From Zygnema circumcarinatum SAG 698-1b (taxonomy: Eukaryota > Plantae > Zygnematophyceae), in NCBI GenBank assembly GCA_037447605.1, contig CM074810.1, positions 744,001 through 808,000 on the forward strand: a DNA stretch of 64,000 nucleotides, read 5' to 3'. The position numbers and the translations under genes are program-made. Position 1 is the first letter of the stretch; each line of letters begins with the position of its first letter. Shown one piece after another: positions 5,444 to 34,275 of this stretch. The notes under the pieces are model-generated. The model ran no database searches and was not told where the DNA came from. It saw nothing but the letters and a program-made list of their open reading frames with translations.

Positions 5444-7117
5444 TCAGACCCTGCCTCTGGGGGGCACTCTCCTCCCATAAGTATTCCTCTCTGTAGCGAC
5501 AACGCCGCCGTTCCCACCCTCTCGTCTCATAAGACCATGAAAGTCCTCCTCTCCAACAGTCCTCGATCTTTGAATTCGACTTTTCCTATATTCAAGGCTT
5601 CCATGAACACTCTCCCCCTCCCTCTCCTGAGCCAACCTCGACCCATCCATTACCGGTGCTACTCTCCCCCCTCTCCCTGCATGCCCTCTCCGCCCAAGTC
5701 TTCCTCTCGCCTCAACACTCGACTTCCCATCGCTCCCATTCCCCATCTTTCCTCTCTCCACGAACCCCTTCGTGCCCAAATTTTGAAGGCCCGAAGGCTC
5801 CGACCTTGAAAGGGGGAGTACTTTAGAGTGGGGTCCCCCCCCCCTCCCCTCCTCTCCCGAGCTGCTTACCTGCTGCTTGGCATCCGTCCAATCGGGATAT
5901 GCCCCGACGAGATGAAGGATTGAATCAGAGGAAGTTCGAACCAAGGGAGACCCTTGCTGCCTCTCTGTTTGCTGCCTCTCGTTTTGCTGCCCAGAAAGGG
6001 AATCCGTATGCATGGGAAGGCCATTCATTCTGTGAATCGGAGAGAACTGCTCATAGCCGGCTCTGAGATGATCTGACAAGTATTGCCGCGCTAGTGGACC
6101 CATCGGAGCAAAATTTGTAAACGGAGAGTTTGCAGACTCTCCACTAAAGAAGCGGCTCGAATCCGTTGACTGCGTTCTGCGCAAACCCTCCGGAAATTTC
6201 TTGTTTCTATGTGACGCCTTCTTAACGATGAGGGGGGTGCTATTGAGAGGAGAAGATGACTGGCCATTCGCTGGAGACGGAAGCATGGGCTCTTTTGAAA
6301 TGCCACGTGGTAGTCCCTTCCCGAGAGGTGGCAAAGCGGCAGCCATGGCGGGCGGACATGGCTGCTCCTCAAACCTAGCACCTTGCTGCCTGCCACCCCC
6401 TCCATTTTGGGCCACATCACTAAGCTCATTTGTAGCCATCATCGAATGTGCTCGGACAATGTCGTTCACATTGTTCCTAAATGGTGTATGAAGCTCCTCC
6501 GTCCGACCCGTCTCCTCCTTCCGCCCGCCATGGCCATGGCCATGGCCATGGCTGCCTGTTTCTGGGAGGCCCAGCGAGGACAAGCTCCCAATGAGCCCCC
6601 GCGCTCGCAGAGACTTCCAAATCGCCTCCATGTCCGCCGGCAGACCGTCTCTATGTGCGGCCACGACAGCCTCCGTTACGTTTTCCGTAGACGGCTCTGT
6701 CGGATCTCCTTCCCCTCCAGCTCCCTCTCCCTCCCTTTCACTCTCCTCTCTCTCCCCTCCTATCTCTCTCTCTCCTCCTATCTCTCTCTCTCCTCCTATC
6801 TCTCTCTCTCCCTCTATCTCTTCCCCTATCACTTTCGCACTGCCACTCTCTCTCTTTCGAAAGAGCGCGAGCCTTCTCCGAAATTTCGATAAGTCAAAGA
6901 ATTCCTGAACGCGTCGTCCATACGAAGCTGGCTCTGAAATATTCTCCACGTGCTGCCGAGGAGGAGGAGGGCCGCCATGGCCGCCATGGCTGCTGCATCC
7001 TCTGCTTCGCCATCGCCATCCCTCTCTCTCCATCCTCCCTCTCTCCCACTCTACTTCCCCCCCTCCCTTCCCTTTCTGCTGATACAAATCCTCCCTCCTC
7101 TCCCCCTCCAAGGCCAT
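5444..7117 (-). CDS. Orphan low-complexity, probably disordered protein A (557 aa from the first plausible ATG) carrying the FDLSKFRRRLA motif
   Basis: 1.67-kb open frame, ATG in GGCCATGG context, CT-rich leader. Motif shared with the ORFs at 24120 and 33019. A strong donor (CAG|GTAAGC) near 5867 means the 3' end may be spliced differently. Confidence 0.65.
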   Translation of the reverse strand: MALEGERREDLYQQKGKGGGEVEWERGRMEREGWRWRSRGCSSHGGHGGPPPPRQHVENISEPASYGRRVQEFFDLSKFRRRLALFRKRESGSAKVIGEEIEGEREIGGEREIGGEREIGGEREESEREGEGAGGEGDPTEPSTENVTEAVVAAHRDGLPADMEAIWKSLRARGLIGSLSSLGLPETGSHGHGHGHGGRKEETGRTEELHTPFRNNVNDIVRAHSMMATNELSDVAQNGGGGRQQGARFEEQPCPPAMAAALPPLGKGLPRGISKEPMLPSPANGQSSSPLNSTPLIVKKASHRNKKFPEGLRRTQSTDSSRFFSGESANSPFTNFAPMGPLARQYLSDHLRAGYEQFSPIHRMNGLPMHTDSLSGQQNERQQTERQQGSPLVRTSSDSILHLVGAYPDWTDAKQQVSSSGEEGRGGGPHSKVLPLSRSEPSGLQNLGTKGFVERGKMGNGSDGKSSVEARGRLGRRGHAGRGGRVAPVMDGSRLAQEREGESVHGSLEYRKSRIQRSRTVGEEDFHGLMRREGGNGGVVATERNTYGRRVPPRGRV

Positions 7118-8310
7118 GGCCGACTTGAGCTTTCGTGAATGCGGGTTTTGGGAGCGTGAGAGAGACGGAATGGAATAAAATGGGAGAGGGTGAGAGAGAG
7201 CGAGGGAGAGAGAGGGAGAGTGGGAGAGAGGGAGAGAGAGTGAGAGAGAGAAGGAGAGACAGAGGGAGAGAGAGAGTGTTAGAGAGAGAGGGAGAGAGAG
7301 AAGGAGAGACACAAAGGGAGAGAGAGATTGAGAGAGAGGGAGAGGGAGGGGGAGAGGGAGAGGGAGAGGGAGGGGGAGAGGGAGAGGGAGAGGGAGAGGG
7401 GGAGAGAGAAAGAGAGAGCGGGTGGCGGTCCGGTCGATTGGAGCTTCGGACCTTTTGAGAGGAAGTCCGCCGGCGGATGTCGAGCGTGCTCCTAGCGGTT
7501 TAACGGCACAGAATGCCTACGTGGCGGCCTGCAATTGGCGCTTCGGGGAGGGACCGGGAAACGCGGAGATGGCGCAGCGTGGCGACCGCCAGATGGATCT
7601 CCTGATTCTGTCGCCGTCCGTACGTTCGTTGATGTCGAGGCCGCGCGCGACACACGGATTTTGGCCGTTGCGGAAAAAGCGGACAAAATGAAAATGATGA
7701 ACTGAATTTGATGTGGATTCACGAATCAAAAGGCGCCACGTTGGAATGAATTGTCGGTAGGTTGAAGATAAAGATCAGAAAGTCCAAACAATAATGTCGG
7801 CACCGACATCCTGGTTAAGAAAACTGGTCGGTGCCCAGGTTCAGACAAAATCAAGACGAGATCTCATTGGCTGGATTGAAGGTCTGCAGTCCATCTTCTT
7901 CCAGCTGGCGGCATCTGGTTGGACAGATCTGCTTAGCCAGCATGTGCCCGTACAGCCGTTGGATATGTCGCCCAACCACCTCGACTCGTTTGGCGGTTTG
8001 TGGGTCACCAGGCTGGCACAGGTGCGGCTGCTCAACCGTCACCGGAACCCTAGATTGTTTTTATTACGTGGTCCCATCGCAGCCGTCCGTGTGCTCATCG
8101 GACGGTTGAGATCATATCCGGACAGTAACTGCCCGGCGTTTCGCGTGAGGAACACGGACACGACAGGTGACGTCATCCACGGTAAAGACGGATCCGTACC
8201 GCCGGTCAATTTCCAATATGTCCTCAGCGCCCGTACCGGATATCGGGAGGGTATCGATACCGCGATACATCCCAATGCCATGCGGGTTCAGTTAACGATG
8301 CAGCGAATAG

Positions 8311-8393
8311 GGTCATGACCATTGTCTGACTTCTCTTGACCAGGTCATGACCCATTGTCGTGACCAGATCGGTCAAGACAGATGGGTCATGAC
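8311..8393. repeat. Three copies of the palindrome GGTCATGAC(C)
   Basis: ggtcatgacc at 8311-8320 and 8343-8352; ggtcatgac at 8385-8393. Confidence 0.7.
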
Positions 8394-10147: not shown

Positions 10148-10709
10148 AGTTTTGAATATTTCGGGAAAAAATCTTTTTCCCGCCCCTCCCGTCCCCTCCG
10201 CTCCCCCCCTCCCCTGCCCTCTCCTCCCCTCCCCTCCCCTCCCCTCCGCTCCCCTCCCTTGCCCTGTCCTCCCCGGCCCNNNNNNNNNNCTTCCCTCCCC
10301 TCCCCTCCCCTCCTCGTTTTCTGGACATTCCACCCCCCTCGTTTTCTCCTTTTCACTATTGACTTCCAACAATGTGCGAAAAGCGCAAAAGCGCAGCCTT
10401 AAACGCAGTTGCAAAGGTCACCAATGTTGGGCAGTTACTCTCTGTTTTCAGGTTTAGGATGCCGATCTTGATGTGAACTCCTTCGTGCTTGTAGTGCTCG
10501 GTGATGACTTGTACGAGCTCATCGCGGGTCTCATACTCAGTTGGTAGCATTTTTATGGACATTGCAAACCGAGAAGAGGAGAGACGAGGAGGGGAGGGGA
10601 GGGGAGGGGAGCGGGCGGGAGGGGAGGCCCGAGGAGGACAGGGCAAGGGAGGGGAGGGGAGGGGAGGGGAGGGGCGGGAAAAAGATTTTTTCCCGAAATA
10701 TTCAAAACT
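10148..10709. mobile_element. Fold-back element with long (GGGGA)-rich inverted arms enclosing a short MULE/FAR1-like peptide
   Basis: Perfect 43-bp inverted match 10148-10190 / 10667-10709, plus a 16-bp match 10256-10271 / 10634-10649. The internal minus-strand peptide MLPTEYETRDELVQVITEHYKHEGVHIKI resembles Mutator transposase N-termini (by eye). Confidence 0.55.
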
Positions 10710-11662
10710 TGGTAGCAAGTCATAGCATACATTTCCGTGCAGAAATTTGCGCGGGAGCCTGCACGTCAACATTGAGCAGTGCTAATGGCAGGGTCAGCAT
10801 GACGAAGGTTTTCTCACTGCATTCTTTGGACGAGACTTAGTGGGCGGTCCTGAACCCTTCTCATTCCCGTGAGAGGCGACTCCCCACTGTAAGCAGGAGC
10901 AGTAGAGCAGGAGAAGGAGGAGAGCCTGCAGCATGAGAGCCTGCTCTCACCTGCTCCTCCTTCAAGCAAAGCATCATGCCCACTCTCCCTATCACCGCTT
11001 CTAGAACCATCGGAGAAAGAGCTCGAGGTGGATGATTTGCTGGAGCCGCTGAATAAAGAATTGCAAACAGCCGAGTATATTCAGCATAGCGCTGCGTTCG
11101 ATAAAAGAATACTTTTGGACGTTCAAGAGAATCATCCAGCAAAAGGTGTTTGCAGGTTGAAACGAGGGACCGGAAAGCAGTGCACTCACCTTTCTTTCGG
11201 AGAGGCTTTGTTTTCTGGAAGAGCGTTATCAAGGCACTTTTCACTTTTTGTATAAGCGTGGCTCCATGCCTGGAAGAGATTCCTTATTGCATGTTAGTTC
11301 CCGTACGAAAATTACTGTCACGTATCTTGAATCCTGTTTTCTTTTTTTTTTTTTTTCGCTTGCCACTGACCGTCCGAGGCGGCACTGCCTTCTGTCCTAC
11401 GTGGCAAGCGCTGGCGAACAACAAAGGGATGGGATGGCAATCAGAACGCAGAACGAAAAAGAAGTGGCATAAAGTGGCCTCACGCATGGCGATGATGCCA
11501 TCAAATGTACATGGACAACATCAGCATCATGGAGAACCACGAGGAACTGGTCGCAAAGGAAGAAGGGCGTGTTGTAGAATTCATGGATGGATGGAATCAA
11601 GCTCGAGCTGCCGCGCCAATGTTGGCGGTCCACGTGGTCAAACCCTCAACATTGGTCTGAAC

Positions 11663-11980
11663 ATGTCAATGTCAATGTCAATGTCAATGTCAATGTCAAT
11701 GTCAATGTCAATGTCAATGTCAATGTCAATGTCAATGTCAATGTCAATGTCAATGTCAATGTCAATGTCAATGTCAATGTCAATGTCAATGTCAATGTCA
11801 ATGTCAATGTCAATGTCAATGTCAATGTCAATGTCAATGTCAATGTCAATGTCAATGTCAATGTCAATGTCAATGTCAATGTCAATGTCAATGTCAATGT
11901 CAATGTCAATGTCAATGTCAATGTCAATGTCAATGTCAATGTCAATGTCAATGTCAATGTCAATGTCAATGTCAATGTCA
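11663..11980. repeat. Perfect hexanucleotide microsatellite (ATGTCA)x53
   Basis: 318 bp of uninterrupted repeat; source of the MSMS/VNVN/IDID/TLTL ORFs in the track. Confidence 0.98.
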
Positions 11981-12926
11981 AGTTTGTCCATTCGAGAAAA
12001 CCAACAACGCCCAACTTTGAGACTTGTTGCGCCGCTTCTTACCACCCCCCTGCTTCCATTTTCATGCCATGACCTGCATCTCCACTTTTGACTGGTGAAG
12101 GCGATTTCTGCGACGGGATCCTCCACCGTGAACTGCATGGAACGGCCACTTTGACCTCATCGTCGCGAGGGGAACAAACCACGATCTATGGGGTCCGTGG
12201 ATATGTTAGTGGTGGCATATAACAGACTTGGTTAGACTAGTGGCTTGGCTGAAGGTGGCTGAAATGTACGCTCACGAAAGCCGTTTCTTACCATTCATGG
12301 GTAGTCCGTTGTTGTGACAAACATAGAACATGCCTTATTGGAAATTACCGTTTATGCCATTACAAGTTGTTGGTTTGAGTTGGAGTATGAAATGAAGTGT
12401 TGGGAGAAGACATTTTGAGAGGGAGAAGAGAGGAGAGAGGGGAGACAGGAGAGGAGAGAGTGAGGAGAGAGCGCAAGCAATAACTACAACAAACATCCGG
12501 AAGGTTAAGAAAAAATTAAAAACCATGTCAAGTTGTGCACATGGGCACAGATGCATGTTCTCAAAGGATGACGGCTCAAGCCTCACTCTCGCACTTCTCT
12601 CGCTATTCCCTATCCCTACACTCGCCGTCATCCTAACGAGAATATGACCTGAATTATGCATGCAAGCACGGAAGTGGAAAAGCTTCCTCTCCTCTCTGCC
12701 TTTACAAACTACGTTTTCCCTTTCTGAAGCTGCCGAGTCACTGCATCTAAAAGCCTATCTATCTCTTCTCCTATCCAACCGAGCCGCTTAAGAAAACAGG
12801 TCCGTAGCCACATATTCACACGCTTCCAAAGAAGACTTCAGCAGAACTTTTCAAAAACGAACACCTTGCATCCTCTCCCTCCCTCCCTCCCTCTCCCTTC
12901 CCTCCTGTACTTCACATTATCTCTCT

Positions 12927-15529
12927 TCACTGAGAAGATATTTTTGGTGTTCTTGGGGTGGTAGGCATAGCAGTGGGAGATGAAGCCGGAGCTCGAGGTC
13001 GAGGGCGGAAGGATCGAACTCTTGACCTCACCTTAGAACGAACATGGAGACATGTCCAACTAGCTCTACCCATGTGCACATAATCTCCAAAACTATCAAA
13101 AGAATCTTCCCACGCACTCGACCCCACATCAATAGGAAGTCCCAACTTCAAGTGTAAGCGAGGCAGCCCGCAGCCCTGCATGACTTGGTTTGAGTCTTTC
13201 TGAGTTCCCTTACTATGGATAAGAGTAGAAATATCGTGTTTCCAGTGCTGCGAAAGAACACCCTTCTTTGCCTCAACGATGATCTTTCCGCTCGTAGAAT
13301 TTTCATGATCGTTCCCTATCTGCTCCGGAGAGGATGCTCCGGTAGAGAGAGGCACTACCACTCTCCGTGGGAGAGTGAGGTGAGGGAGGTTCAGACATGT
13401 CTCCATGAACCGCTCCGTCTGCGTCTGCTTCTCGGACGAATGAGATCGTTTGGGAGCTTCTATAGGTTCCTTTTTCTGCCATTCTTCACTCGCTTCGTGC
13501 TTTTGCAGCTCCTTTACTTGATTGTACAGCATCTCTTCGAAGATATCCGTCACTTCTGAAGGTGCAGTTTCTGAATCTACCTGCTCCGCAACCTCCTCAT
13601 TTTCTGCACTAACATCATCAACAAGAGGCTTCGCGATATCGTCTGCTTCCGGACGTCTATCTCCTGTTACCTCATTTCCAGGTGTAATACCTGCATCCCC
13701 TGCACCTGCAACACTATTCCTGACATCATCGACAGATACGGTTTCCAACGTCACCGATGTAGAGACTGAGTCATCTCCGCCTCCCACTCCCACTCCCACT
13801 TTCTCTCCCACCTCATCTCCAGCCCCAGAAACCGCACTTCCATTCGCTTCCGCAGCCTCCATAGCAAAAGTCTGCATCAAATCAGCACATTGCAGTGACA
13901 CGCTCAGAACTCGCCCAAAATAACCATCCAAAACACCCACCTCCACTTTCTCCAGACCAAAGAAACTGCTTGAAACCCACTTCAACTTTCATTCACCCTA
14001 ATAAATAAAGCGCTTACCTCATTACGAAGCCGCATCCATTCCGTTCTAAGAGCCCCTCTCGGGCGCTCTTCAATCCATGACTTCTTCCTCCTCACACCAT
14101 GAGACGAGGTCTTCCGCCTCCATCCCTCTCCCCTCCTCTCCATTAACTCCTCCTCCATCAACCCCCCCATCCGAATACCTTCTGTCATACATCTCCTATA
14201 CGCCCTTGACATGAACTCGTCCTCATCTCCATCCATCCGTCCCTCTCCCTCTCCCTCACCCTCCCCCTCTCCCTCTTCTTCTCCCTCTCCCTCTCCCTCA
14301 CCCTCTCTCTCTCCTTCTCCCTCTCCATTTCTCCCTGAAGCCAAATCCCCTTCCTTTAACTGAACCTCGCGCCTAAATCTACTCCCAATTCCGGGACTCT
14401 CGCCCACCTCCCGCTCCTCCGCCTTCGTTTCCTCCCTGCCCCGGAAAACCCAACCCATATTTTTCCTAGGAATCGCCTCATTTCCTAGCTGTAATCGCCC
14501 ATACGGGTTCACCACAGGCTGCTCTAGCCCCAACCCATAGTCCATACAATCCGCTAACGATTTGATGGACGATCTTGGACCCAATTCACCCTCCTGTCCT
14601 CCTCCCCCGCTCCCACATTCGGCCCTCCCTGCATATAACCCCGCTCTCGCACACCGCTGCTCCCGCGACATGCCCACCCATTGCATCCGTAACCGCCCCA
14701 TCCCTCCCTCTCTCGCCCCATCTCCCTCTCGCTCCATATCCTCTCCCATCCCACCCACACTGCCACGTGTCGCAAACTCCTCCTCTGACCCCGACTCGTC
14801 GCTGGAGACCGCTGCACTCGACTCCCCGAGAGCCGTCGGCGGCCATGGCCGCCCCGCGGGAGCAGAAGAGAGAGAAAGGGAGGGAGCGTGAGAGAGAGGG
14901 AGAGAGCCCTCTCCTCCTCTGCGAGGAACAGGAGGGGCCCCTGCCCCTCTCCTCCTCTTCTGCTTCGACGCAGTCCAAACGCTGCTCACTGCAGCCCCGT
15001 CCGTACGTTCCCTAGACCCTTCCGAGCCAGGGGAACTGCCAGCTGGCGCGCTTGTATTGGGCTGCTGCTGACGCAGCGCAGACCCAAGAGGCCACGTGGC
15101 AGGCTGCCGCGCCGCCGCGCGGCTCCCCCTCCGTAGCTTCCTGCCTCCCTGCTGGGCCTCCCCTGAGGAGCCATGGCTCCGCCTGAAGCCGAGCCACGCG
15201 AAGCGGCTCTGGGAGGAGGACGCGCCTCCCTCTTCGCAGTGGTTCCCGTAAAGGTCCCGCGCGGATCCATGGCTGCCGCCTTCGTGGGGCTCAGGGTGAT
15301 CCGCCTCCTTCCCGCCATTCCCGGCCATGGCTTCCATGGCGGAGGAGGAGGAGGCGGCGGGGGCGGGCGGCGCCGAGCGCGTGCTGTGCTCGGGACTGCC
15401 CCCGTCGGGCGACCACGCGGCGTAGGAGGAGGGCAGGTCCAGCGGGAGGCTGCGCGTCGTGTGGTACCGCTCCAACCGCTTGCCTCGCTCCTTCCCGCCT
15501 CTCTCCCGCTCTCTGTGCGCCCCGCCCAT
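12927..15529 (-). CDS. Orphan low-complexity protein C, two exons (15529-14018, 13871-12927)
   Basis: The two long track ORFs join through a 146-bp phase-0 intron (GAG|GTAAGC ... TGCAG|ACT), giving ...WMRLRNE|TFAMEAAE.... Carries TTRSLPLDLP...WSPDGGSP, VWTASKQ, KQTQT and LHLKL motifs. Confidence 0.7.
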
Positions 15530-21646: not shown

Positions 21647-21692
<46 letters not shown>

Positions 21693-23270: not shown

Positions 23271-24119
23271 CTTCACCGGACGCACTTTCAAGCAGGCGGT
23301 CCATGTGAGCCGTCACATGCCGTATATCGCAGTTACGTTTTTTGACTGCAACTGTAACTGTCATGTGAACGTAACACAACGATCATTCCAAACTTCAATC
23401 TCTCCTCGTGTGAACGGGAAAAGACTCATATCGGATTCGGTATCAATATTATATCGAAGTATATCGTGCATCGGATATCTGCTGGTCAACGAAAGTCAAC
23501 AAAAGAGGACCTCCGGGAATCTCGTAACCGATTTCGTACCCAGTCCTGCGTTACGGGAACATATTTTGTCGGGAAGGGCAGATATGACAACTGTACATTT
23601 TTGTCTTTTGCGCCATGTCTACAAAACAGACCAAATCTGATTCGTTTGACAGCCTGGCAGTCAGATAACTTCCGCTGAAAATACCAGGACTTTTTATCGT
23701 CTAGTGACGTCGGATATTCTGCACCGAATCTGATTTCAAATCTGAAGTTTATCCAATCATTTAAACCTTGTCTTTTCAAACCACCAAATCTGCATTACCA
23801 ATCGGACACAAGCCTCAAAAAGCGCTTTCAAAAACGACAAATCCCTCTGATGCCCCCAGCATCACGGTTTGACCACGATCCTTTCGTACAACTGTTCGTA
23901 CATGCAAATCCGTACGCCCTGCCCCGCCCGCCCGGAAGGGTCCAGGCCCGTTCCCTATAAACACCCGCGGGCCGCCGGAGGCTCACCAGGTCCGGGCTTT
24001 AGCAGGCGGGGTTCAGAAGTCGCCGGGCTTAGGGAGCCTCGCTTCAAGAGAGGGAGAGAGAGAGCCTCGCTTCGAGAAAGAGAGAGAGAGAGAGAAAGAG
24101 AAAGGGAAAGAGAGAGAGG

Positions 24120-24743
24120 ATGTGGGCGGCGAAGGAGAGGACGAAGGGCCGCTCTTGGGACGACGGGCAGGGCGCCACGTGGCACCCTGCCGGGAAGCCA
24201 ACGATGCGACAGGTGGCGCCCGGCCCGCTCGTGCGGACGCAGTCGCTGGACATGGAGCGGAGCCATGGACCGCCCGCGACGGAGACGGAGCCCTTCGACT
24301 TGGCGCACTTCCGGCGGCGGCTGGCGGCCGTGCGGAAGGGCGGGGGGCTGAACGCGGGGTCTCCCTTGCGGCCGCGGGGACAGCTGCCGGCAAACGGGGC
24401 GAGGGATTGGAGGACGGAGGAGGCCATGGATAAGGAAGGGAGGGAGAGGGAGAGGGAGAAGGGTTTCGGGCTTAAGACGCATCGTCTTCGAAACGTTTCC
24501 TATGATAGCCATACGCCAAGTTTGGAGAAAGCGGGAGGTGCGCAGCAAGGCGGTCCTTTCAGAGGTCCAGTGAAAGGAGAGCAGGAAAAATCAAAAGTCG
24601 GCGCCATGCAGAAGCATGCGCAGCAGCCGAATCCTACGACGGAACATCCAAGTCCGAGACTGCGGCGGGAGACGTCAAGATTTGTCGTCCTCTTCGCAAG
24701 GAGTTGGGAGGCGAAGGTCGAATCGGCCTCCTCCAAAAACTAG
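24120..24743 (+). CDS. Orphan protein D (207 aa) carrying FDLAHFRRRLA and PLVRTQS motifs
   Basis: Single ORF with TATAAA at 23956 and a GA-rich leader; motifs shared with proteins A and F. Confidence 0.62.
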   Translation: MWAAKERTKGRSWDDGQGATWHPAGKPTMRQVAPGPLVRTQSLDMERSHGPPATETEPFDLAHFRRRLAAVRKGGGLNAGSPLRPRGQLPANGARDWRTEEAMDKEGREREREKGFGLKTHRLRNVSYDSHTPSLEKAGGAQQGGPFRGPVKGEQEKSKVGAMQKHAQQPNPTTEHPSPRLRRETSRFVVLFARSWEAKVESASSKN

Positions 24744-25676
24744 CAATTCAATCATAATTCTTTCAGTAACGATGCCGAACGATTTTTTGGCGATGTATGA
24801 TGGCTGTATGTGCTGTGCAAGTGCTGAAGTAGCTTAGGATTCTTTTCAATGGCAAGCACTTTAGGATTGGATTTATTTTTTGCTAGTGTTCAAAAGCTAT
24901 TCAAAAATATTTTGATACTTAGGTTCGTAACCTTTTTTGGTGTGAAGGATGTCCAATAATACTTGTTCAGTAGCAGCATAGGGCTCACTCAATACTTAGC
25001 CATTGAGTAGACTACTTGACAAAGTACCTATGTAAATTGTCAGGTTTACTGTATCGTTCGCTTGCCAAATTCGGGCTGTTTTCAGGAAGACCGGTTCAGC
25101 AGTTTACGGAGTCCTTCTGCTAAGCTTTGTATATTACGATTGTACTTTGGTAATTTAATATCCATTTTTTTAGTGTGAAATTTGTAATTGGACATGCTGT
25201 GTCCATTCAACCAGACTTCGTTTGCACTTTCTTTGCTGTGAACTGTTTGCTCATCACGCTTTACGGTTGTTGCGTACCTGTTATTATGCTGCCTCAGAGC
25301 CAAGCTTTTCTCAGCATTCCGCGAAAATTGCCCTTCTTTTTGCTGCTAAAGCATTGTCCTTCAATTTCTAAAGAATTTTCTTGTCTCGTTCGTTCAGATG
25401 ACAGTGTATAAGCTTTGCCCATGTTGCGTGTGCAACATGGCGGCATTCACGACCTAGCATTAGCAATATGATTGTTCTTTAGGACCTTTGTGTTGAAGAT
25501 GTCAATCAAAAAACATGAAAGGGCTGACAGACCAAGCCGTGTAGCAGTATAGCCTCAGAGGTCCTCATATTATTACAGGCTCAAATTTTGAAGTAAGTGG
25601 GAGTGGCTGCATTGGAAGTGACGGCCATTTTTCGAAGGGACGCAGCGTCTCCCCCCCATGGACAGTGAAACCGCTG

Positions 25677-25790
25677 CAATGGTTGGGACGATTCAACCAT
25701 CGACAATGGTTGCCAACCGCCGATCCAATGGTTGGCGATCGATCACTCCCAAGGGCGGGGCCCCATCGCGCGTTTCGCCGCCGTGTGCCA
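25677..25790. repeat. Dispersed CAATGGTTGG-rich repeat (related copies at about 30721-30890 and 31167-31280)
   Basis: caaccatcg[a/g]caatgg..ccaacc.....tccaatggttggcga...cactcc.aagg aligns between 25.7 kb and 31.2 kb. Confidence 0.7.
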
Positions 25791-25986
25791 CGCGTTTTCA
25801 TCGCCCATCGGGGAACGTTGCTGACACAACATCTACGTGGCATCCACGTTGGTGCCACGTGGACGCCACGAGTTTCAAAAATCTCTCCTCGGATTTAACT
25901 CAAAATTGACGTTAAAATAAGAAAACTTAAATTAAAATTAATATGTAATTATTTAAATTTATTGTTATTCAACAACATAACACAGA

Positions 25987-26058
25987 TCTTCGGTAGTATA
26001 GTGGTAAGTATCCCCGCCTGTCACGCGGGAGACCCGGGTTCAATTCCCGGCCGGAGAG
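25987..26058 (+). tRNA. tRNA-Asp (GUC)
   Basis: 72-nt cloverleaf: acceptor TCTTCGG/CCGGAGA, discriminator G, anticodon arm CCCGC-CT-GTC-AC-GCGGG, A box TAGTATAGTGG, B box GGTTCAATTCC, T5 terminator at 26062-26066. Confidence 0.98.
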
Positions 26059-26175
26059 CTCTTTTTGGTGGGTTTTAGTCACTTTGAGCCTTTTTCCTTT
26101 TTCCATTCCTATGGGACCGCCCCCTGCAGAGGGGTATTTCGCAGAAGGGCTTTTGTGAAGGCAGTCACACTGCAG

Positions 26176-26280
26176 AGCTCTTTTCTTTCGTCCTTAGGTC
26201 CCCTTGTGACTTGTGAGCGGTTAAGAGTGGTTCTCGATGGTTGGCTTTGTCCATGCGCCTTTGATGGCATCGTCACTCGT
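26176..26280. repeat. Dispersed repeat family (copies at about 63496-63615 and, partially, 8435-8495)
   Basis: agctcttttc.tt.gtcc.ttaggtcc..ttgtgac ... tccatg...tt.atggcatcg.cac is shared with 63.5 kb; tcgcca.cgtgagttcaat is shared between 8.47 kb and 63.59 kb. Confidence 0.6.
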
Positions 26281-26994
26281 TTTTTCTTGTCATCTTTTGT
26301 TTCTCTTAAAGAAGAAGAAAAATCGCAGCGCTGTGCAGCACTCAGCAGCTTCTTTCTTGGAGTCTGCCGACAAGACCTTTGCCTCGCTCCTGATTGGACA
26401 ATGGATGCTCGTCTGGTAACGCAAGTACGGTACATTTTGGGGAAATTTTATGTTTTTTGAGAATTTGTTTGGGCAAAATTGTGGCGCCAATACGCGCTCT
26501 AGTGCGCGGTCGTCCTCTTCCTCCATACAAAGGTCGCCAGGATGCAACAACAACACTTAAGCTGCGGAGAACTCACAAGTTACACAAATTCGCTTCTCAT
26601 AGAAAGGCAAAACGAAAAATTCGAAGTTCGGCATTGCATTCCAACGAATGGAGTTGGAACAAGTTGAATTCGCATCTTTCCTGAACCCTCGAATTCTCCA
26701 ATTTCCGTAAAACATGACTACCCGGACTGACAACAAGCCCCAATCCTCTGGGTCATCTCTGACCTCCCCCACATCCCTCACAGATTTCGCAAAGAGGACA
26801 ATACAAGGCACACATAGGACGACACGGGTCCTTCAAAAAAGGAAAAATCTACAAGCTTTTCAGTCAATTCTGCCCCAATTACAAGAGAGGGTGAGCGCAA
26901 TGCCCTCCTGTGATAAGACCATGCAGCGAGCCCTGAAGCACGCTTATTATATCAACCCAAAGCCGGCTTATCTACTTATTATCACTACAACGCT

Positions 26995-28998
26995 TTAGCG
27001 TGATCCACGGAGCGGGCGAGGAGTTGCCGATCGTGACTGTGAAGGTGAGCATGAGGGGGCAGGAGGCAATGCTCGGGAGGATGCATTACTCATCCGGGGG
27101 GGAACAGTGGCCCGCACAACTGGTCGTCTCTTTGGCCGCGTGAAGGGATGCCCACATCTCATTTCAGTGCCACCCAGTGACAAAACAGTAGTCGTAGACT
27201 TTGATTCATGGAAGCCATTGAACTGAGTGGACGCATCAACTTTACAGCTTTGAAATCGAGGTGTTCCTTCTCCCCTTCCCGTGTATCGGAATCGCGACGA
27301 CTTATTGGAATTGCTCTCTTGTTCATAAAGGTCCTCCACCCGCATCCTCCGCATTAGTGCGAATTCCTCCGCAATGTTCAGTTTTGGAGCAGTCGGCTGA
27401 GAGGGCTCCAACTTTCGCCCTCCCATATCTGGCTCAAAAGTAAGAGACCGCCTTAATTCCCCATATCCGTGCTCATATGAACCTCCCGTACTACTTGGGA
27501 GGTCGGCCTCCTCCTTGCTTATTCTCGTCGACGGAAGATCTACCTTCACCTGTTCGTCCTGCCTAACGTTCAGTTCTGAAGATAGGTCAATGCTCTCCCG
27601 CAGTCGGTGCTCACCTCCTAATCGTAGAGGAGGAAGACAACTGTACTCTGCACTCGACTGTAGCCATTTGAAACCTTTACTTGCCTTAGCTTCTTCCTCA
27701 ACTACCCTCCCCTTCCGAACACTCTGCTGATTGGATTTTAGGGTTGAGGTCTGTTGCTCAATCTTGCTTGAGTGCTTCGACCTTACCTTCTGTACCGAAA
27801 TGCCTCCTATCTTCCCTTTCCGGAGTCGCGGCTTATATTCGACCTCTCTAAAATGTTCAACCTCGACCTCAAGTGCTGGAGAAGCCATCACGTCTGCCCC
27901 AAACTCCCCATTTTCATGCAGGTTGGGAGACCTCCATTCTTCCGACGAAGGTAATCCTTCCCCCGCTTCCGCGCCGCCATGTTGTCGTTCACTGTCTTTA
28001 GTGCTGACATCATGCTCCACCTCCTTCGGTGGGAGTCTCCCTCCTCCCCGAGACAACCCCGCCCCTCCTGCCCCTGCTCTCGCCTGCCGCGTAGCGGACC
28101 ATATCGTACGCTCCCCCCTAGACGCTGCCATATCTGAACCCTCAACAGACTTCCCCTCCGCAAACCCTACCATCTTCCTCCTTTCCACGCCGTTTCCCCC
28201 CCTGCTCACTCCTTCCCCGTTCACACCACAACTGCTGCAACTGCTCTGATCCGAGAGCTTCGGAGAATTCCAGACCCCTCTCTCTCCTCTCTCTCCATGG
28301 CACCGCGAGCAGTAGCTCTTACCTCCCCCATTACGTGGCCTCCCGCCGGCCCTACCAGGTGTCCCCAGCGGCCGCTTTGGAGTCGTCCACGGAGAGTACT
28401 GATTGGTGGTGCTGCTGACGGGACTGCTGTCGGGTGACCACGATCCATATAAAGGGATCATCAGCGGAACGCTTTTCGTTTTCCTGAACTGCATGGACTC
28501 CCTCGACTTCCGCATGGTCGCCTCTATGGCACGCTGCCACTTGCTCACTTCTCCGCCGTCACGTTTCCGCCGCCATGGACTCGACGATATCGACTTCACG
28601 GGGCTCGCAGCTTCTCGCTGCCTTCCCCATAGCAGCCCCTTCCCGCCCTTTCTCTTACCATCCTTGCAGCTTTGTCCCTTCACCTCACCCGGACTCCCTC
28701 CCTCCCCTCTCTCCCCCTCTCCTCGCTCACTCAGGCATAGCCCCAAAGGAGAGACTCCCGCAGCTTTCCAGTCTCCCACTATCTCCTTCTCCACGAAGTC
28801 CGAAAGTGAGCGTCTCAGCCCGAACACACTCCCCGCCCCTCCCTCCCCCTCCCCCTTCCCCTGACCCCCTCCCCCTCCCCCTCCCCCTCCTCCTCCCGCA
28901 TGAATCAACATCCATATGGAATCTCTGTCGGCTTTCTTCCGCAGCTCTCCCGTGCTCTGCCGGCTCAACATCGCCTCCTGCCATTCCGACATCACCAT
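26995..28998 (-). CDS. Orphan low-complexity protein E (667 aa from the first ATG)
   Basis: 2-kb intronless open frame; FRKTKSVPLMIPLYGSWSPDSSP, IWSATRQ, RKMVGFAE and DASTQF motifs. Confidence 0.7.
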   Translation of the reverse strand: MVMSEWQEAMLSRQSTGELRKKADRDSIWMLIHAGGGGGGGGGGGQGKGEGEGGAGSVFGLRRSLSDFVEKEIVGDWKAAGVSPLGLCLSERGEGERGEGGSPGEVKGQSCKDGKRKGGKGLLWGRQREAASPVKSISSSPWRRKRDGGEVSKWQRAIEATMRKSRESMQFRKTKSVPLMIPLYGSWSPDSSPVSSTTNQYSPWTTPKRPLGTPGRAGGRPRNGGGKSYCSRCHGERGERGVWNSPKLSDQSSCSSCGVNGEGVSRGGNGVERRKMVGFAEGKSVEGSDMAASRGERTIWSATRQARAGAGGAGLSRGGGRLPPKEVEHDVSTKDSERQHGGAEAGEGLPSSEEWRSPNLHENGEFGADVMASPALEVEVEHFREVEYKPRLRKGKIGGISVQKVRSKHSSKIEQQTSTLKSNQQSVRKGRVVEEEAKASKGFKWLQSSAEYSCLPPLRLGGEHRLRESIDLSSELNVRQDEQVKVDLPSTRISKEEADLPSSTGGSYEHGYGELRRSLTFEPDMGGRKLEPSQPTAPKLNIAEEFALMRRMRVEDLYEQESNSNKSSRFRYTGRGEGTPRFQSCKVDASTQFNGFHESKSTTTVLSLGGTEMRCGHPFTRPKRRPVVRATVPPRMSNASSRALPPAPSCSPSQSRSATPRPLRGSR

Positions 28999-31900
28999 CG
29001 CCCCCTCTTCCAACCTCTCCCTCAACCCTTTCCCTCTCCCCTTCCCCTCACCCTCTCCCTCTCCTTTTCCCACCCACTCACCCCTCGCCCTGTCCCACTC
29101 CTTTCCCTCTCCTCTCCTCTCCCTCCTCTCTTCCTCTCCCACTCCTCTCCCTCTCCCTCTCCCTCTCCCTCCCTCTCGTTCACCCCTCGTTTCTCTCCCT
29201 CCCTCTCCCTCAGGGTGTCGGCGGGCGGGCGGGCGGGCGGGCGGGCGGGCGGGCAGGCCATGTGGGGAGGGGGCGACAAGCCGGCGGCGGCCGGCGAAGC
29301 GGCGGAAGGACCGGACCGCCGCGCGCGGGCTGCCCGAAAAACATTTAGCAGAGCCCTGCGGGCGGCGGGCAGCGGGAAAAGCTTCGCAGAAACGCCAGCG
29401 AAAAAATTTATTGAGGGAGTGGCACCACCGACATTTGGGACCGGCCGCGGAATTTCCGGGATCAACACGACAGCTGGCGCGAGGAAAACTCGCCGTTGAT
29501 TTATGACAGTAGTGGACGAGCGGTTGGGTGGGTAGATCGGGTGGTTCGGGTGGATCGGGTGGATCGGGTGGACCAGTGGCAGACTGGAAGGAATTTTGAT
29601 TTTACGGGCAGGAAAAATATCGTTTTTTCTGCCCCCCCGCGGATGGTCAATGTGCGCGGGCGGTGGACCAGAGGGCCTCGATCGGATCCGGGCGGCAGGT
29701 CCAAAATTTCGTTTTGTCGCCTTCTTAACCGACAAATCTTACCACTGATGGAGGCGGCAAAGGCCGTACAGTATTATCCGCTGAAGTGGATCCGACTGTT
29801 CCACTTGAGAAGACGGATTGGGATCAACTGTGCACTTCAGAAAACAATAAAGTAATATAATTACTCGCTTCGGTATGGATCTGATGGAAGTGGAATCCCA
29901 TTCAAGTGGTTGATCTTCCGATCGGCGGAAGTCAAAGACGACAAATTCCATACGGCCGCATCCCAGCCGTCGGATGTGCCGCCGCCCTCTGCCGATCAAA
30001 TTTTGGCAGCATTCGCAGCAATTGGTAATTACGCCGCAATACGTCAAACTTGGGATTCGCGTGGCGGGTGGCTCCGCCACGTCACAGGAGTCTGTTTGTC
30101 GTCTAGCGACAGCGCACTCGTCCACTTGCCGCTCAGGGGAGGACCGGAAACGGCTTCAAAAAACCCAGCGAGAACGACTGCTCCATGCGGCGGATTGGCC
30201 CCAGTTCCGTATTAGGACTTGCCATTTCCGGTTTTTTGAGGACCAACAATTACGGGAAGTGTCCCCACTGTGTGAACAATAGACGTCATAAGTTTTCAAT
30301 GTTTATATTTGATGACGTCATTGCCATTTTGTCGATCTGATTATCCAGCATAATCTGTCTTGTAGTGAGATCCCCCGCTTCCAGTGGTTTGTCGTTTTGC
30401 CCTGGTCGGTTGGCTGCTCCCAGTCGTGCCGCCAATGCCCGCGTGCGTTCCCGCGGGACTTTTGTCCGGACGCTCTCCTTTGGACGCTTGCGCGGGCCCA
30501 CAGCGGGTACTATGCCGTACAGTATATTTGACGTTTGCTGCATTGGTACGTTTGTCAGGACCTTCGTCAACGGTACTGTTATGTACGGCGTAGTTTGTCG
30601 TACTATAATTGACAAAACTACAGTACAGTACTGTACTGTGGCTGTCCTAGACCGTACGAATGTTCCCCCAGTAAGCTCGGAGGTCGGCAACTAATGGTCA
30701 AATGTTGGGGCCAATCTTGCCAATGGTTGGCTGGCCGGCCAGACAATTGCTCGACCCATTGGTCCATGTACAGCTGATGGCATCGCCATTGTGAGATCAA
30801 TGCCACATCTCTTCACCCATTGACAATCGGCAATCCAATGAAACGAACCATTGCCAATGGTTGGCAAGTGAATCGTTGCAACCATTGGCGATAGCTGGAA
30901 CCACTTCAACAAGAACCAAAATGGCAACTGCCGACAAGGAGGTTCCAAACAATGGTCCGGCCCTTGAGGAGGGGCGAAGGGAGGGGGGTGAGAGTAAACT
31001 TACACGCGTGGTCGTAAGGTTGACACAGACCAAGTACTCCGGTAACATCGCAATCTTGTTGTGGCTCAATACCTTAGGAACTTCCTATTTCATGAAGTCT
31101 GACGCTCCCTAGCAATCTACGCTGTCAAAATTAAGATCAATGAAGACATTTTCAAGTAGGTGTTCCCAATGGTTGGAACAAGTCAATGGTTGTTGTATCG
31201 TTCCAACCATCGGCAATGGCCAACCAGTGGTCCAATGGTTGGCGACCACTCCAAGGCCGCGTCTCCATCGCTCGTTTCCAGGAGATTCGTCCGCGCGCGC
31301 TCTGCCGAACTGGCTGCAACCGCGCGGTGACCGCCGGTCGAGGTCGCGGCTCGCTGCCACTTGGGCCAATAACAATGCTGTCACGTGACAAACGCTGATT
31401 GGCTTAAAGAAAAATCTTTTTTTGCAAATCCAGATGACACCTGCAAGGCTTCGCCCGTCGATTAACCCTAAAATTTGCTGATCGAACGGTCTCGCCTGCT
31501 GCACATTGCGCCGCCAAAGTAACGTTATTGGGCCACGTCATCACACATCTGATCTCCACCTCAAGATCGCAGGAAATCGGATCCTCCCACTGACACCCAA
31601 GATTCTGCCACGGCACCTTCAAGCCCCGATCGTGCTCGCTGAGTTGGCACTATCGGACGGTCGTGAACAGTTCCCGGTCTCGCCAATGTCGTGACAAGAT
31701 CTTGTCCGCTAGCGACTCGTACAGTACATTTTGACCATCTTCCCTCGAGATGCACCGACACGTCTGACCGTACTGAAAGGAGATCTCGCGCTTTGACTTT
31801 CGCAATAACTCAACCTGATGACCAATTATAATCATCCACGTGTCGTACAAGACAGAATAATCTGTCGCTGTCTGCGACGTGACGTTCTGATCACCTGGCC

Positions 31901-33018
31901 AGATTCAGCCTCCCCTACCTGTCGTTATAGCAAACGACGTGGAAGTTGCGGCTGCGGCGGAGGCGCCAACAGCCGCCCACCGCGCGCGCTTTCGGCCCGA
32001 ATGGAAGGTGCCGTACAGATCCAGTCAGCACGCCACGTCAGATAATATGCACGCGTGGCAGTCGCGGAATGGCTCCAGTCGGCGGGTACCGTCCGTCGCT
32101 TTCACCGCCTTTCGAAAAGGCTTTCTTTTTCCACTCAAATTTCACTCTCTCTCACTCACTCCCTTCCTCTCCCGTTCTCATATTTTATCCCTCTCTACCT
32201 CTCTCCCCAATCTCGCTCTCGCTCTCTCTCTCTCTCTCTCCCTCACCCCCTCTCTTCCTTGTACACGTTCTATCCCATCACAGATATGCAACGATTTAGC
32301 ACGCAAGTATTCAGATAGCCGACCCTGCTTGAAACCCTTACAATGTTATGCCGACCCTTCCCATAAGTGACCACCCCCATCCTCAGACCCCATCCAAAAT
32401 ACGTGGCAGCCGCCGACTGCCAAAAGCAGCAACCGCCCAACGCACACTTTGGCTCCTCTGGCGAGTCCCTCCGTATAGCCTTCCGATGCCAAACTGAAAT
32501 CACTTCACGCGAGTTCCTTGTCCGTACTTCGAACTGAATCAGGTCTGTGTACAGTACTTGGAATCACTGTACCTGTATCTGAACTGTGACACTTCAACTC
32601 CTACACTGTGAATCAACGTTACCCTCTCTACCTCCTCCCGCCCGCTCTCCCCTTCACTCCCACCCATACCCCGTCCCCCTCTCTCCTCCCCCCTCCTCCC
32701 TCCTCCCTGCTCCCTCCTCCCTCCCCCGTCCCCCTCCGTCCTCCCCCCTCCACCCCCCCCCCCCTGCCCTTCCCTCCCCCTCCCCTCTTCCTCCCCCTCC
32801 CACTCTCCCTCTCTCCCACTCTCAATCCCTCTCCCTCCCCATCACCTTTCCCTACTCTTCCTCTCCTCTCCCTTCCCTCCCCACTCCCTCTCCCTCTCCC
32901 TCTCGCTCTCCCGCTCCCCTCGCCCCCCCCTGCCCACTCCCTCCCCCTCTCCCTNNNNNNNNNNCCCTCTCCCTCTCCCTCTCCCTCTCCCTCTCCCTCT
33001 CCCTCCCCCTTTCCACCC

Positions 33019-34275
33019 ATGGACACACTTTCGACCGCTGTCAAGGGGTACGAAGCAGGCGCCGACCCCTACGACTTGACCGCCTTCCGACAGCGACTCG
33101 CGTACGAACGGCAACACAGGCAGCGGCAGGAGCAGGGGGCGACCGTTCAACGGAACGGAAAACATGGAACCGCTCCTGAATCCGGGGCTGCCTATGCAGA
33201 AGCGAGTAACCCTAAGCCCTCCAATCTCACAGAACGAGCCGGCCATGGCGAGCAGGGCAACATACTAGGGTTCAGGCGGGCGCGCCCAATCCCTCTCAGC
33301 ATTCCCTTCTCTAGGGAAGCCTCTCCCTTCTCCAGTCCGGACATGGTCGGACCTTCCCCTTTGCCGCAAAACCCTAGGGAGCTCGACAGCAAGGGCACGA
33401 ACCGCCTCCGGAAAGTAACTTTTGCAGAAAATATTTCTGGTTTGGGCCCCCAGAAAAGTTCGAATGAAGTTCAATCGAACTCAGCTTTGAGGCATGTGAT
33501 CCGGAGGTCCACGTGGCGAAGCATGGTGGCTGGCGAGGTTGAAGTTGAACCCTCTCCCCAAGTTCAATACCAAATTCGCCCCACGTGGAAGCAGAGTGTG
33601 GAATCACAGGAGGGGTCCAAGTTTCAACCAATTCCACCAAAGAAAGAGATGAAATTGGACGATTCAATCGTACAGTCGACAGTACGAGATGATGCATGCG
33701 TGAACATGGACTCTCTGCCTATTGCGGAACCGGTTAACATATGGAACATAGTTAATGGGAAAATCGAAAGGTTGAAAGACACTCAAACAGGAAGAGAAAT
33801 TAACATCATTGAGCTTCCGGTAGCGTGGCCAGTCAAAATTGACCAACTTCCTCCTCTCCTTCAGAAGGCTCTCGATGTGACGTCAGCACCCACAGCATGC
33901 AGTGGGGGAAACGACCCTTCTTTGAACATCGAAAGATGCAACGCAGAGGAAGCAAACGTGACCTCTCCAAGCTCTGTTTTACGTCCCAGTGACTCCATTG
34001 ATTCCAACAGAGACAACCACTCTCAAGAATCCTGTGTTTTAGAGAAGAGAAAGCCGCTTTCTCCGAAGTCCGGGGTTCAGCAATGTGCAGGTGCAGGTGG
34101 AAGTCGGCGCAGGCAAGTGGGGTCTCTGTTGAAGGGGAAACCCTTCGTGAAGCCTCTCTTGGATGGGAAGGGGGCGATGGGGGGAGAGCACTCGAATTTG
34201 AGAAGAGTGAGGTCGATTGGATGGGAGGACTTAGTTTGTTTCGGGAGTTCTGTTGGGGCTCGTTTTGGGAATTAG
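33019..34275 (+). CDS. Orphan protein F (418 aa) carrying both family motifs
   Basis: Intronless ORF after a CT-rich leader; YDLTAFRQRLA, FRRARPIPLSIPFSREASPFSSP, RKVTFAE and KDTQT. Confidence 0.72.
   Translation: MDTLSTAVKGYEAGADPYDLTAFRQRLAYERQHRQRQEQGATVQRNGKHGTAPESGAAYAEASNPKPSNLTERAGHGEQGNILGFRRARPIPLSIPFSREASPFSSPDMVGPSPLPQNPRELDSKGTNRLRKVTFAENISGLGPQKSSNEVQSNSALRHVIRRSTWRSMVAGEVEVEPSPQVQYQIRPTWKQSVESQEGSKFQPIPPKKEMKLDDSIVQSTVRDDACVNMDSLPIAEPVNIWNIVNGKIERLKDTQTGREINIIELPVAWPVKIDQLPPLLQKALDVTSAPTACSGGNDPSLNIERCNAEEANVTSPSSVLRPSDSIDSNRDNHSQESCVLEKRKPLSPKSGVQQCAGAGGSRRRQVGSLLKGKPFVKPLLDGKGAMGGEHSNLRRVRSIGWEDLVCFGSSVGARFGN

What the first reader, a model, noticed from the sequence alone, without database searches (positions are those of the whole stretch)
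5444..34275. Cluster of orphan disordered proteins sharing the 11-aa motif [FY]DLxxFR[RQ]RLA
Seen: three otherwise unalignable, intron-poor ORFs carry the same motif near the N-terminus. A has FDLSKFRRRLA (6898-6866), D has FDLAHFRRRLA (24294-24326) and F has YDLTAFRQRLA (33070-33102). A and D also share PLVRT[SQ]S, and A and F share a C-terminal R(S/V)R(T/S)(V/I)G(E/W)ED(F/L). The codons differ while the peptide is kept, which points to selection on protein sequence. I do not recognise the motif from any named family. Inference: a locally expanded, lineage-specific family of scaffold or regulator proteins with a helical docking motif. This is the best candidate for an undescribed system in the window.
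Basis: partly seen in the sequence, partly recalled or inferred. Interest (0 to 1): 0.82.

Follow-up and report, generated by a model that had tools for sequence, protein, structure and literature searches.

The report
Orphan disordered proteins sharing helix motif
Three, possibly five, neighbouring genes of a streptophyte green alga encode floppy proteins with no database relatives that all keep one short helix-forming peptide; the family is real but modest and lineage-specific, its function is only inferred, and I could not test whether it is expressed.

Summary
[FY]DLxxFR[RQ]RLA occurs exactly three times in the six-frame translation, at the stated coordinates. It lies in the N-terminal parts of ORFs A (5444-7117 -), D (24120-24743 +) and F (ATG 33019-34275 +). 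Leave-one-out profiles recover each copy as the best non-training hit of the whole window (E 1e-6 to 9e-3). Third codon positions have drifted. A, C, E and F are open in one frame only.

AlphaFold predicts F as disordered except for one confident helix that starts inside the motif. The pattern reads as an Asp N-cap with a hydrophobic staple, followed by a basic helix.

F shares a second block, F[RK][RK]x[RK]x[VI]PLxIP..SPxxSP, with ORFs C and E, so the cluster may have five members. The C-terminal block and PLVRT[SQ]S are present but not significant alone. The proteins are enriched in Phi-x-R-x-x-S/T and S/T-P kinase-type sites.

No relatives turned up in Pfam, PDB, the Atlas, three word-indexed searches, an exhaustive profile search of 1.84 billion proteins, metagenome scans or papers.

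Neither assembly gap touches a motif-bearing CDS. The scan has noted similar orphan disordered families elsewhere in this genome. Verdict: a real, undescribed, probably lineage-restricted family of unknown function.

The parts
5444..7117 (-). Gene A: 557-aa ORF from ATG 7117. The longer listed ORF, up to 7312, is CT-microsatellite leader. Carries m1, two L[RV]RTxS sites and the C-terminal block.
   Evidence: 0 stops in frame against 11-19 in the other five frames. No Pfam hit. AlphaFold single-sequence mean pLDDT 42.7.
6866..6898 (-). m1 in A: FDLSKFRRRLA, aa 74-84
   Evidence: Leave-one-out E 0.002. Model helix 76-90.
5927..5947 (-). PLVRTSS in A, a Phi-x-R-x-x-S site
5540..5569 (-). C-terminal block m3 in A: RSRTVGEEDF
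   Evidence: Not significant window-wide.
13982..15529 (-). Gene C: 515-aa ORF, candidate family member through m2 only. The ORF at 12927-13985 abuts its stop.
   Evidence: 0 stops in frame against 8-17 in other frames. BLASTP C-E E 0.003.
15392..15466 (-). m2 in C: YHTTRSLPLDLPSSYAAWSPDGGSP, aa 22-46
   Evidence: Leave-one-out E 0.012.
24120..24743 (+). Gene D: 207-aa ORF, the shortest member. Its gene model is uncertain.
   Evidence: 0 stops in frame against only 2-4 in other frames. Frame preference by codon score is indeterminate.
24294..24326 (+). m1 in D: FDLAHFRRRLA, aa 59-69
   Evidence: Leave-one-out E 1e-6.
24225..24245 (+). PLVRTQS in D, a Phi-x-R-x-x-S site lying upstream of m1
26995..29142 (-). 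Gene E: 715-aa ORF with its first ATG at 28998 (667 aa). Candidate member through m2, with a weak RRMRVEDL at 27351-27328.
   Evidence: 0 stops in frame against 11-36 in other frames.
28420..28488 (-). m2 in E: FRKTKSVPLMIPLYGSWSPDSSP
   Evidence: Leave-one-out E 2.4e-7.
33019..34275 (+). Gene F: 418-aa ORF from ATG 33019. The only member that carries m1, m2 and m3.
   Evidence: 0 stops in frame against 8-19 in other frames. The AlphaFold model is disordered except helix 21-41.
33070..33102 (+). m1 in F: YDLTAFRQRLA, aa 18-28
   Evidence: Leave-one-out E 0.009. pLDDT 94-95 for residues 21-40.
33271..33339 (+). m2 in F: FRRARPIPLSIPFSREASPFSSP
   Evidence: E-F E 0.019 within the five ORFs. Leave-one-out is only E 0.3 window-wide, though it is the top non-training hit.
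34204..34233 (+). C-terminal block m3 in F: RVRSIGWEDL
   Evidence: Not significant window-wide.
32955..32964 (.). Assembly gap inside a (CCCTCT)n tract, 55 nt upstream of F's ATG. It lies outside the CDS as read here.
10280..10289 (.). Assembly gap inside a C/CT-rich simple repeat, between genes A and C. It lies in no family ORF.

Best explanation
A, D and F are diverged paralogues of an undescribed family of soluble, intrinsically disordered proteins in a streptophyte green alga. As far as the databases can show, the family is lineage-restricted. C and E probably belong to it through block m2.

Shown: the only part kept in A, D and F is a roughly 15-residue peptide, [ED]x[FY]-D-L-x-x-F-R-[RQ]-R-L-A-x-x-R-[KQ].

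Inferred: this peptide is the N-terminus of an alpha-helix. Asp is the N-cap. The aromatic residue before it and the Phe five residues on form a hydrophobic staple. F/L/A plus three Arg form the conserved surface. I take it to be a short linear motif that folds on a partner, that is, a docking helix.

Inferred: the rest of each chain is a fast-evolving spacer, loaded with basophilic Phi-x-R-x-x-S/T sites and S/T-P sites. In C, E and F there is also a basic-PhixPhi stretch followed by an SP cluster. The proteins would then act as phosphorylation-controlled adaptors or regulators. No step of this function was tested.
For: - Motif exactness and rarity.
- Leave-one-out E of 1e-6 to 9e-3 over all six-frame ORFs, and a shuffle maximum of 9.6 bits against 43-51 bits.
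- Synonymous drift with the peptide conserved.
- A, C, E and F have no stop in frame against 8-36 stops in every other frame.
- No DNA repeat other than GA/CT microsatellites links the genes.
- AlphaFold model of F is disordered (279 of 418 residues under pLDDT 50) except helix 21-41 at pLDDT 94-95. A has a helix at 76-90.
- Composition is 59-73% disorder-promoting residues, with no hydrophobic 19-mer above a Kyte-Doolittle mean of 0.91.
- m2 is shared by C, E and F.
- Phi-x-R-x-x-[ST] occurs 15 times against 6.1 expected (P 0.0015). [ST]P occurs 35 times against 21.7 (P 0.0015).
- No known family or relative.
Against: - There is no transcript evidence. The runs that hold 34-54% of the 31-mers of 24000-32900 are of unknown type.
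- D's ORF is short and its openness is barely significant on its own.
- F's membership of m2 is weak window-wide (E 0.3).
- m3 and PLVRT[SQ]S are not significant alone.
- The helix's confident pLDDT comes from a three-sequence alignment of the motif itself. It is not consistently amphipathic.
- Blank searches have low power. Paralogous copies score only 12-25 bits against a profile that excludes them, while about 35 bits are needed at library scale. The organism's own proteins are absent from the libraries.
- The kinase-site regexes are generic, and L[RKV]RxxS was chosen after seeing the data.
Confidence: 0.55

Rival explanations
1. Only A, D and F are related. C and E are unrelated neighbouring orphan genes, and their m2 resemblance to F is a chance match between Pro/Ser-rich stretches.
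For: A profile of C and E finds F's m2 at only E 0.3 window-wide. m2 is Pro/Ser-rich. C and E have no m1.
Against: F is still the best non-training hit. E-F E is 0.019 and C-E E is 0.003 within the five ORFs. The block order m1 then m2 is collinear in F. All five ORFs are adjacent, orphan and similar in composition.
Confidence: 0.25
2. The conserved basic helix is not a protein-docking site. It is instead a nuclear-localisation, nucleic-acid-binding or acidic-lipid-binding element.
For: Net charge over 14 residues is +7 in A, +5 in D and +2 in F. Arg occupies three invariant positions. Other basic clusters are scattered through all five proteins.
Against: The invariant positions also include the non-basic residues [FY], D, L, F, L and A in a fixed register. 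Simple charge-driven binding or an NLS does not require that. Amphipathicity is low in F.
Confidence: 0.2
3. The genes belong to an already described plant or algal family of disordered proteins that has diverged too far for the searches used.
For: Search power is low for short motifs (one search scores against the threshold). The libraries lack this organism's proteome.
Against: No Pfam family matches any of the five at E up to 10, apart from one sub-threshold TrAA12 stretch in C. An exhaustive m1 profile search gave only two hits, both repeat or multi-HTH artefacts. There is no PDB, Atlas or literature match. The known motif classes I checked do not fit (see membership tests).
Confidence: 0.12
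4. The ORFs are not genes. They would be chance open frames in skewed, microsatellite-rich DNA, and the motif would be a leftover of an old DNA duplication.
For: There is no transcript evidence and there are no homologues. The protein language model's 'recognition' score is 920-980, in the range of shuffled sequences. D is open against only 2-4 stops in other frames.
Against: ORFs of 418-715 codons have no stop while the other two frames of the same strand have 12-36. Second codon positions are conserved and third positions are near random. Flanks are unalignable and no dispersed repeat is present.
Confidence: 0.06

Closest known systems
Plant substrates of basophilic kinases (SnRK2/SnRK1/CDPK type) recognised through Phi-x-R-x-x-S/T, the 'LxRxxS/T' phosphomotif (from my own knowledge of the plant phosphoproteomics literature)
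   Same: All five proteins are disordered. They carry 15 Phi-x-R-x-x-[ST] sites against 6.1 expected, including LRRTQS, LVRT[SQ]S, LRRSLS/T and LRRVRS.
   Different: This is a site class, not a protein family. No phosphorylation or kinase link was tested. The defining m1 helix has no counterpart in that class.
MAPK substrates with a D-site, a basic cluster followed by Phi-x-Phi, upstream of S/T-P acceptor sites (ELM DOC_MAPK_gen_1, regex recalled from memory)
   Same: m2 in E (RKTKSVPLMI) and F (RRARPIPLSI) fits the regex and is followed within 8-15 residues by SPxxSP.
   Different: C does not fit the regex. D-site matches are not enriched overall (15 against 10.5, P 0.15). No kinase interaction is known.
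EAR repression motif (L/F)DLN(L/F)xP of plant transcriptional co-repressor recruiters (consensus from memory)
   Same: Both start with an aromatic or Leu followed by D-L, and both have a hydrophobic residue a few positions on.
   Different: m1 has two residues rather than one Asn between L and F. It has no Pro, continues as a basic helix, and is predicted helical rather than extended.
Helix N-cap with hydrophobic staple in folded proteins, for example DPFDLTHF in the RON kinase domain (PDB 3pls)
   Same: It has the same local pattern: P-aromatic-D-L-x-x-F at the start of a helix. It was the top PDB match to the m1 profile, though not significant at E 0.66.
   Different: That motif is part of a globular kinase fold. 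The resemblance covers 8 residues, is not significant, and implies no homology.
Other orphan disordered 'phospho-motif plus helix' gene clusters noted by this scan in the same genome (s1-360957, s1-372277)
   Same: They share the organism and the pattern: neighbouring paralogues, disordered chains, kinase-type motifs, one conserved helix and no database family.
   Different: They lie on different DNA. I could not compare the sequences.

Membership tests
Any Pfam-A family | Match to a curated profile at or near its gathering score | tested here: not met
   A, D, E and F have 0 families at E up to 10. C has only TrAA12 at 17.2 bits against a cut-off of 30.9, over one 37-aa stretch.
EAR-motif proteins | (L/F)DLN(L/F)xP or LxLxL | tested here: not met
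   m1 is [FY]DL-x-x-F-R. The spacing is wrong, and there is no Asn and no Pro. The consensus is from memory.
MAPK D-site substrates (ELM DOC_MAPK_gen_1) | [KR]{0,2}[KR].{0,2}[KR].{2,4}[ILVM].[ILVF] close to S/T-P sites | tested here: inconclusive
   The regex is met in m2 of E and F but not of C. There is no overall enrichment (P 0.15). S/T-P sites are enriched (P 0.0015).
14-3-3 mode-1 clients | R-[S/x]-x-pS/pT-x-P kept at the conserved block | tested here: not met
   In m2, E has KTKSVP and C has TTRSLP, but F has Pro (RARPIP) where the phospho-Ser would be. The generic 14-3-3 regex is not enriched (25 against 25.2).
LxRxxS/T basophilic-kinase substrates | Enrichment of Phi-x-R-x-x-[ST]; phosphorylation in vivo | tested here: inconclusive
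   The sequence enrichment is met (15 against 6.1, P 0.0015). Phosphorylation cannot be tested with these tools.
APC/C D-box, cyclin Cy (RxL) and TOS motifs | R..L..[LIVM]; [RK].L.{0,1}[FYLIVMP]; F[EDQS][MILV][ED][MILV] | tested here: not met
   By eye on the three m1 copies: the D-box fits D only, the Cy motif fits A only, and TOS fits none. The regexes are from memory.
Undescribed m1 family (this report) | [FY]DLxxFR[RQ]RLAxxR[KQ] in the N-terminal part of a long disordered ORF | tested here: met
   A at aa 74 of 557, D at aa 59 of 207 and F at aa 18 of 418. Leave-one-out is significant.

The most novel reading that the evidence does not exclude
m1 is a new class of short linear docking motif: an N-capped basic helix that recruits a conserved streptophyte hub protein. 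The five-gene cluster would then be a rapidly diversifying set of phosphorylation-gated adaptors for that hub. The similar P-x-D-[LIM]-S-x-R-L-A-A helix that the scan noted in the floppy N-termini of this alga's GRAS regulators (s1-350940) could be a variant of the same docking code. I did not test that link.
Probability: 0.12. Interest if true: 0.55.

Novelty: new member of a known kind. Interest (0 to 1): 0.3.

Why it matters
Streptophyte algae are the closest relatives of land plants. Their lineage-specific genes are mostly unannotated. A clustered family of disordered proteins held together only by a helix-forming peptide and kinase-type sites is a concrete, testable example of how signalling adaptors arise and diversify. 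If the motif's partner were found, it would define a new docking motif. As it stands, this is one more orphan disordered family with an inferred function. That is useful for annotation and for choosing a peptide for pull-downs, but it would not surprise a specialist.

Tried and rejected
- One local script on the closed machine translated the whole window, those places included, for a local HMM scan. I masked them only in the next such script. That was an oversight.
- Word-indexed protein searches gave nothing: F whole, A residues 48-95 at E up to 10 and the five-protein alignment.
- Exact look-ups of D and F gave nothing.
- ESM Atlas for F, A and E gave no usable hit.
- PDB by sequence and by m1 profile gave nothing significant.
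- The exhaustive m1 profile search gave two hits. One is a tandem-repeat ORF (SYDLSHWRW eight times). The other is a five-fold XRE-type HTH protein (FGQRLAYTRKKK). Both score by summing partial matches and neither is a relative.
- Metagenome scans: the peptide pattern gave 94 matches with none confirmed. The degenerate DNA pattern gave 9 loci. Seven are one unrelated soil family, and none has m2 or m3.
- Composite F-plus-fragment alignments (A2-A6) were built for a more sensitive profile. MAFFT split the fragments. The usable one (A5) scores the paralogues at only 14-24 bits, so I used the short m1 profile A7 instead.
- Inverted duplication of E and F with their flanking tRNA-Asp genes: only the tRNAs align, at 97.7% over 87 nt.
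- Large DNA repeats or LTRs were sought; only microsatellites were found.
- The codon-score test is weak and partly circular.
- Literature search for FRRRLA, FRQRLA and FRRRL found nothing relevant.
Full report
**What is there.** The window is eukaryotic. Earlier notes of this scan call the organism a streptophyte green alga. These are 6898-6866 on the minus strand, 24294-24326 on the plus strand and 33070-33102 on the plus strand. Looser patterns add none. The carriers are ORF A (5444-7117 from its first ATG, 557 aa), ORF D (24120-24743, 207 aa) and ORF F (ATG 33019 to 34275, 418 aa). The motif starts at residue 74, 59 and 18 respectively.

**The gaps.** The gap at 10280-10289 sits in a C/CT-rich simple repeat between genes. 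The gap at 32955-32964 sits in a (CCCTCT)n tract 55 nt upstream of F's ATG. No motif-bearing coding sequence crosses a gap. Only the listed 5' extension of ORF F (32608-33018) does. It encodes P/S/L low complexity and I do not count it. I could not test continuity with reads. One local script did translate the whole window on the closed machine before I masked them, and that was an oversight. Later scripts and the repeat finder stayed clear of them.

**Is it more than chance?** Profiles built from two copies were searched against all 1350 six-frame ORFs of the window (90 kaa). Each recovered the left-out copy as the best non-training hit. E was 0.002 for A, 1e-6 for D and 0.009 for F. The best of 27,000 shuffled ORFs reaches 9.6 bits against 43-51 bits for the copies. 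Within the 11 codons, second positions are nearly all identical, while third positions match in only 5, 3 and 7 of 11. The flanks are 20-50% identical. No DNA repeat other than GA/CT microsatellites connects the genes. So the peptide, not the DNA, is what is kept.

**Are the ORFs genes?** A, C, E and F have no stop in frame, against 8-36 stops in each of the other five frames. That includes 12-36 in the two other frames of the same strand, so strand skew does not explain the openness. D is open against only 2-4 stops, so it relies on the in-frame motif. A codon-score test points the same way for A, C, E and F, but it is weak and partly circular. I have no direct transcript evidence. Six runs from three studies of the same organism hold 34-54% of the 31-mers of 24000-32900. 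Their type is not on record, and I could not lay them.

**More members.** F shares a second block, F[RK][RK]x[RK]x[VI]PLxIP followed by SPxxSP, with two further neighbouring orphan ORFs. These are E (26995-29142 minus, block at 28488-28420) and C (13982-15529 minus, block at 15466-15392). The leave-one-out results are:

| Left out | E (window-wide) |
|---|---|
| E | 2.4e-7 |
| C | 0.012 |
| F | 0.3, still the top non-training hit |

The cluster may therefore hold five members, with F as the link, but the tie between C/E and A/D/F is tentative. The C-terminal block shared by A and F is not recovered window-wide. PLVRT[SQ]S is not collinear between A and D. No further copy of any block exists in the window. 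A multi-exon WD40 gene (17105-22160, minus) and two tRNA-Asp genes lie among the members.

**Anatomy and likely mechanism.**
- *Disorder.* All five proteins are 59-73% disorder-promoting residues and have no membrane-like segment.
- *Helix in F.* AlphaFold predicts F as disordered, with 279 of 418 residues under pLDDT 50. The exception is one helix, residues 21-41, at pLDDT 94-95, which begins inside the motif. That confidence rests on a three-sequence alignment of the motif region.
- *Helix in A.* A folded alone also shows a helix at 76-90, at low confidence.
- *Reading of the motif.* The pattern aromatic-Asp-Leu-x-x-Phe reads as an Asp N-cap with a hydrophobic staple between the residue before the cap and the fourth helical residue. 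This is textbook helix-capping knowledge and an inference here. The invariant R, R, L, A and R follow.
- *Amphipathicity.* The helix is strongly basic in A and D but is not uniformly amphipathic.
- *Kinase-type sites.* Phi-x-R-x-x-[ST] occurs 15 times against 6.1 expected. [ST]P occurs 35 times against 21.7. Both have P 0.0015 by composition-preserving shuffles. The sharper L[RKV]RxxS count (7 against 0.4) was chosen after seeing the data.

My best reading is a family of phosphorylation-controlled disordered adaptors that dock through the N-terminal helix. Only the conservation, the disorder and the helix prediction are shown. Docking and phospho-control are inferred.

**Comparison with what is known.** Every search for relatives came back blank:

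| Search | Result |
|---|---|
| Pfam, five proteins, E up to 10 | One sub-threshold stretch in C only |
| Word-indexed search of 5.8 billion clusters (F whole, A motif region, five-protein alignment) | Nothing, not even the window's own proteins |
| Exact look-ups of D and F | Nothing |
| ESM Atlas (F, A, E) | No usable hit |
| PDB, by sequence and by profile | Nothing significant |
| Exhaustive m1 profile search, 1.84 billion representatives | Two hits, a tandem-repeat ORF and a five-fold HTH protein, both scoring by summed partial matches |
| Metagenome scans | 94 unconfirmed pattern matches, then 9 loci; seven are one unrelated soil family, none with m2 or m3 |
| Full-text papers | No mention of the motif |

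EAR, D-box, Cy, TOS and 14-3-3 mode-1 patterns do not fit all copies. A MAPK D-site pattern fits m2 of E and F only.

These blanks carry two limits. In-cluster paralogues score only 12-25 bits against a profile that excludes them, while about 35 bits are needed at library scale. The libraries also evidently lack this organism's proteome.

**Verdict.** Function, expression and lineage restriction are not established. Earlier notes of this scan describe similar orphan disordered families elsewhere in the same genome (s1-360957, s1-372277). They also describe a somewhat similar helix motif in GRAS N-termini (s1-350940). These are leads that I could not test. I rate this as a new member of a known kind, namely taxonomically restricted disordered proteins organised around short linear motifs, and of modest interest.

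Noticed in passing
window 25987-26059 (+) and 35781-35853 (-): Two tRNA-Asp(GTC) genes in inverted orientation bracket the divergent pair E and F. They are 97.7% identical over 87 nt, including about 8 nt upstream. Everything outside them is unalignable. This could be an ancient inverted duplication or a coincidence.
   Followed up: partly
window 12927-13985 (-): A 352-aa acidic ORF starts where C's ORF stops, with a 4-nt overlap in another frame. It contains SSAWEDSFDSFG, reminiscent of F's C-terminal SIGWEDLVCFG. Gene C may continue into it by splicing or an assembly frameshift. It has no Pfam hit.
   Followed up: partly
window 7137-7438, 15564-15739, 29003-29198, 32900-33018, 10200-10320: Genes A, C, E and F each have a GA/CT microsatellite at their 5' end. 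Both assembly gaps in the finding lie inside such tracts. This is probably a genome-wide promoter or leader feature and the cause of the assembly breaks.
   Followed up: no
window 11591-12059: A perfect tandem array of about 470 nt (spacing 12, reading MSMSMS, VNVNVN or DIDIDI depending on frame) creates several spurious ORFs of 120-313 aa.
   Followed up: no
window 17105-22160 (-): A multi-exon WD40 beta-propeller gene lies between family members C and D. WD40 repeats are seen in ORFs 17105-17779 and 20511-22160.
   Followed up: partly
L001, L002, L004, L005, L006, L008, L009 (soil metagenome contigs): Seven contigs share a conserved peptide, FD[FL]xxF[SR][QH]RLA[VI]N[RS]QL[DY]LI, in ORFs of 72-403 aa. 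They were hit only because the peptide fits the degenerate m1 DNA pattern. They form an unrelated family, and the peptide may be an off-frame reading of some conserved element.
   Followed up: no
P0002 (585 aa, from the representative library): This protein has five tandem XRE-type helix-turn-helix units, each starting FGQRLAYTRKKK, followed by a sigma-70 region-4-like tail. It is an unusual multi-HTH architecture and is unrelated to the finding.
   Followed up: no
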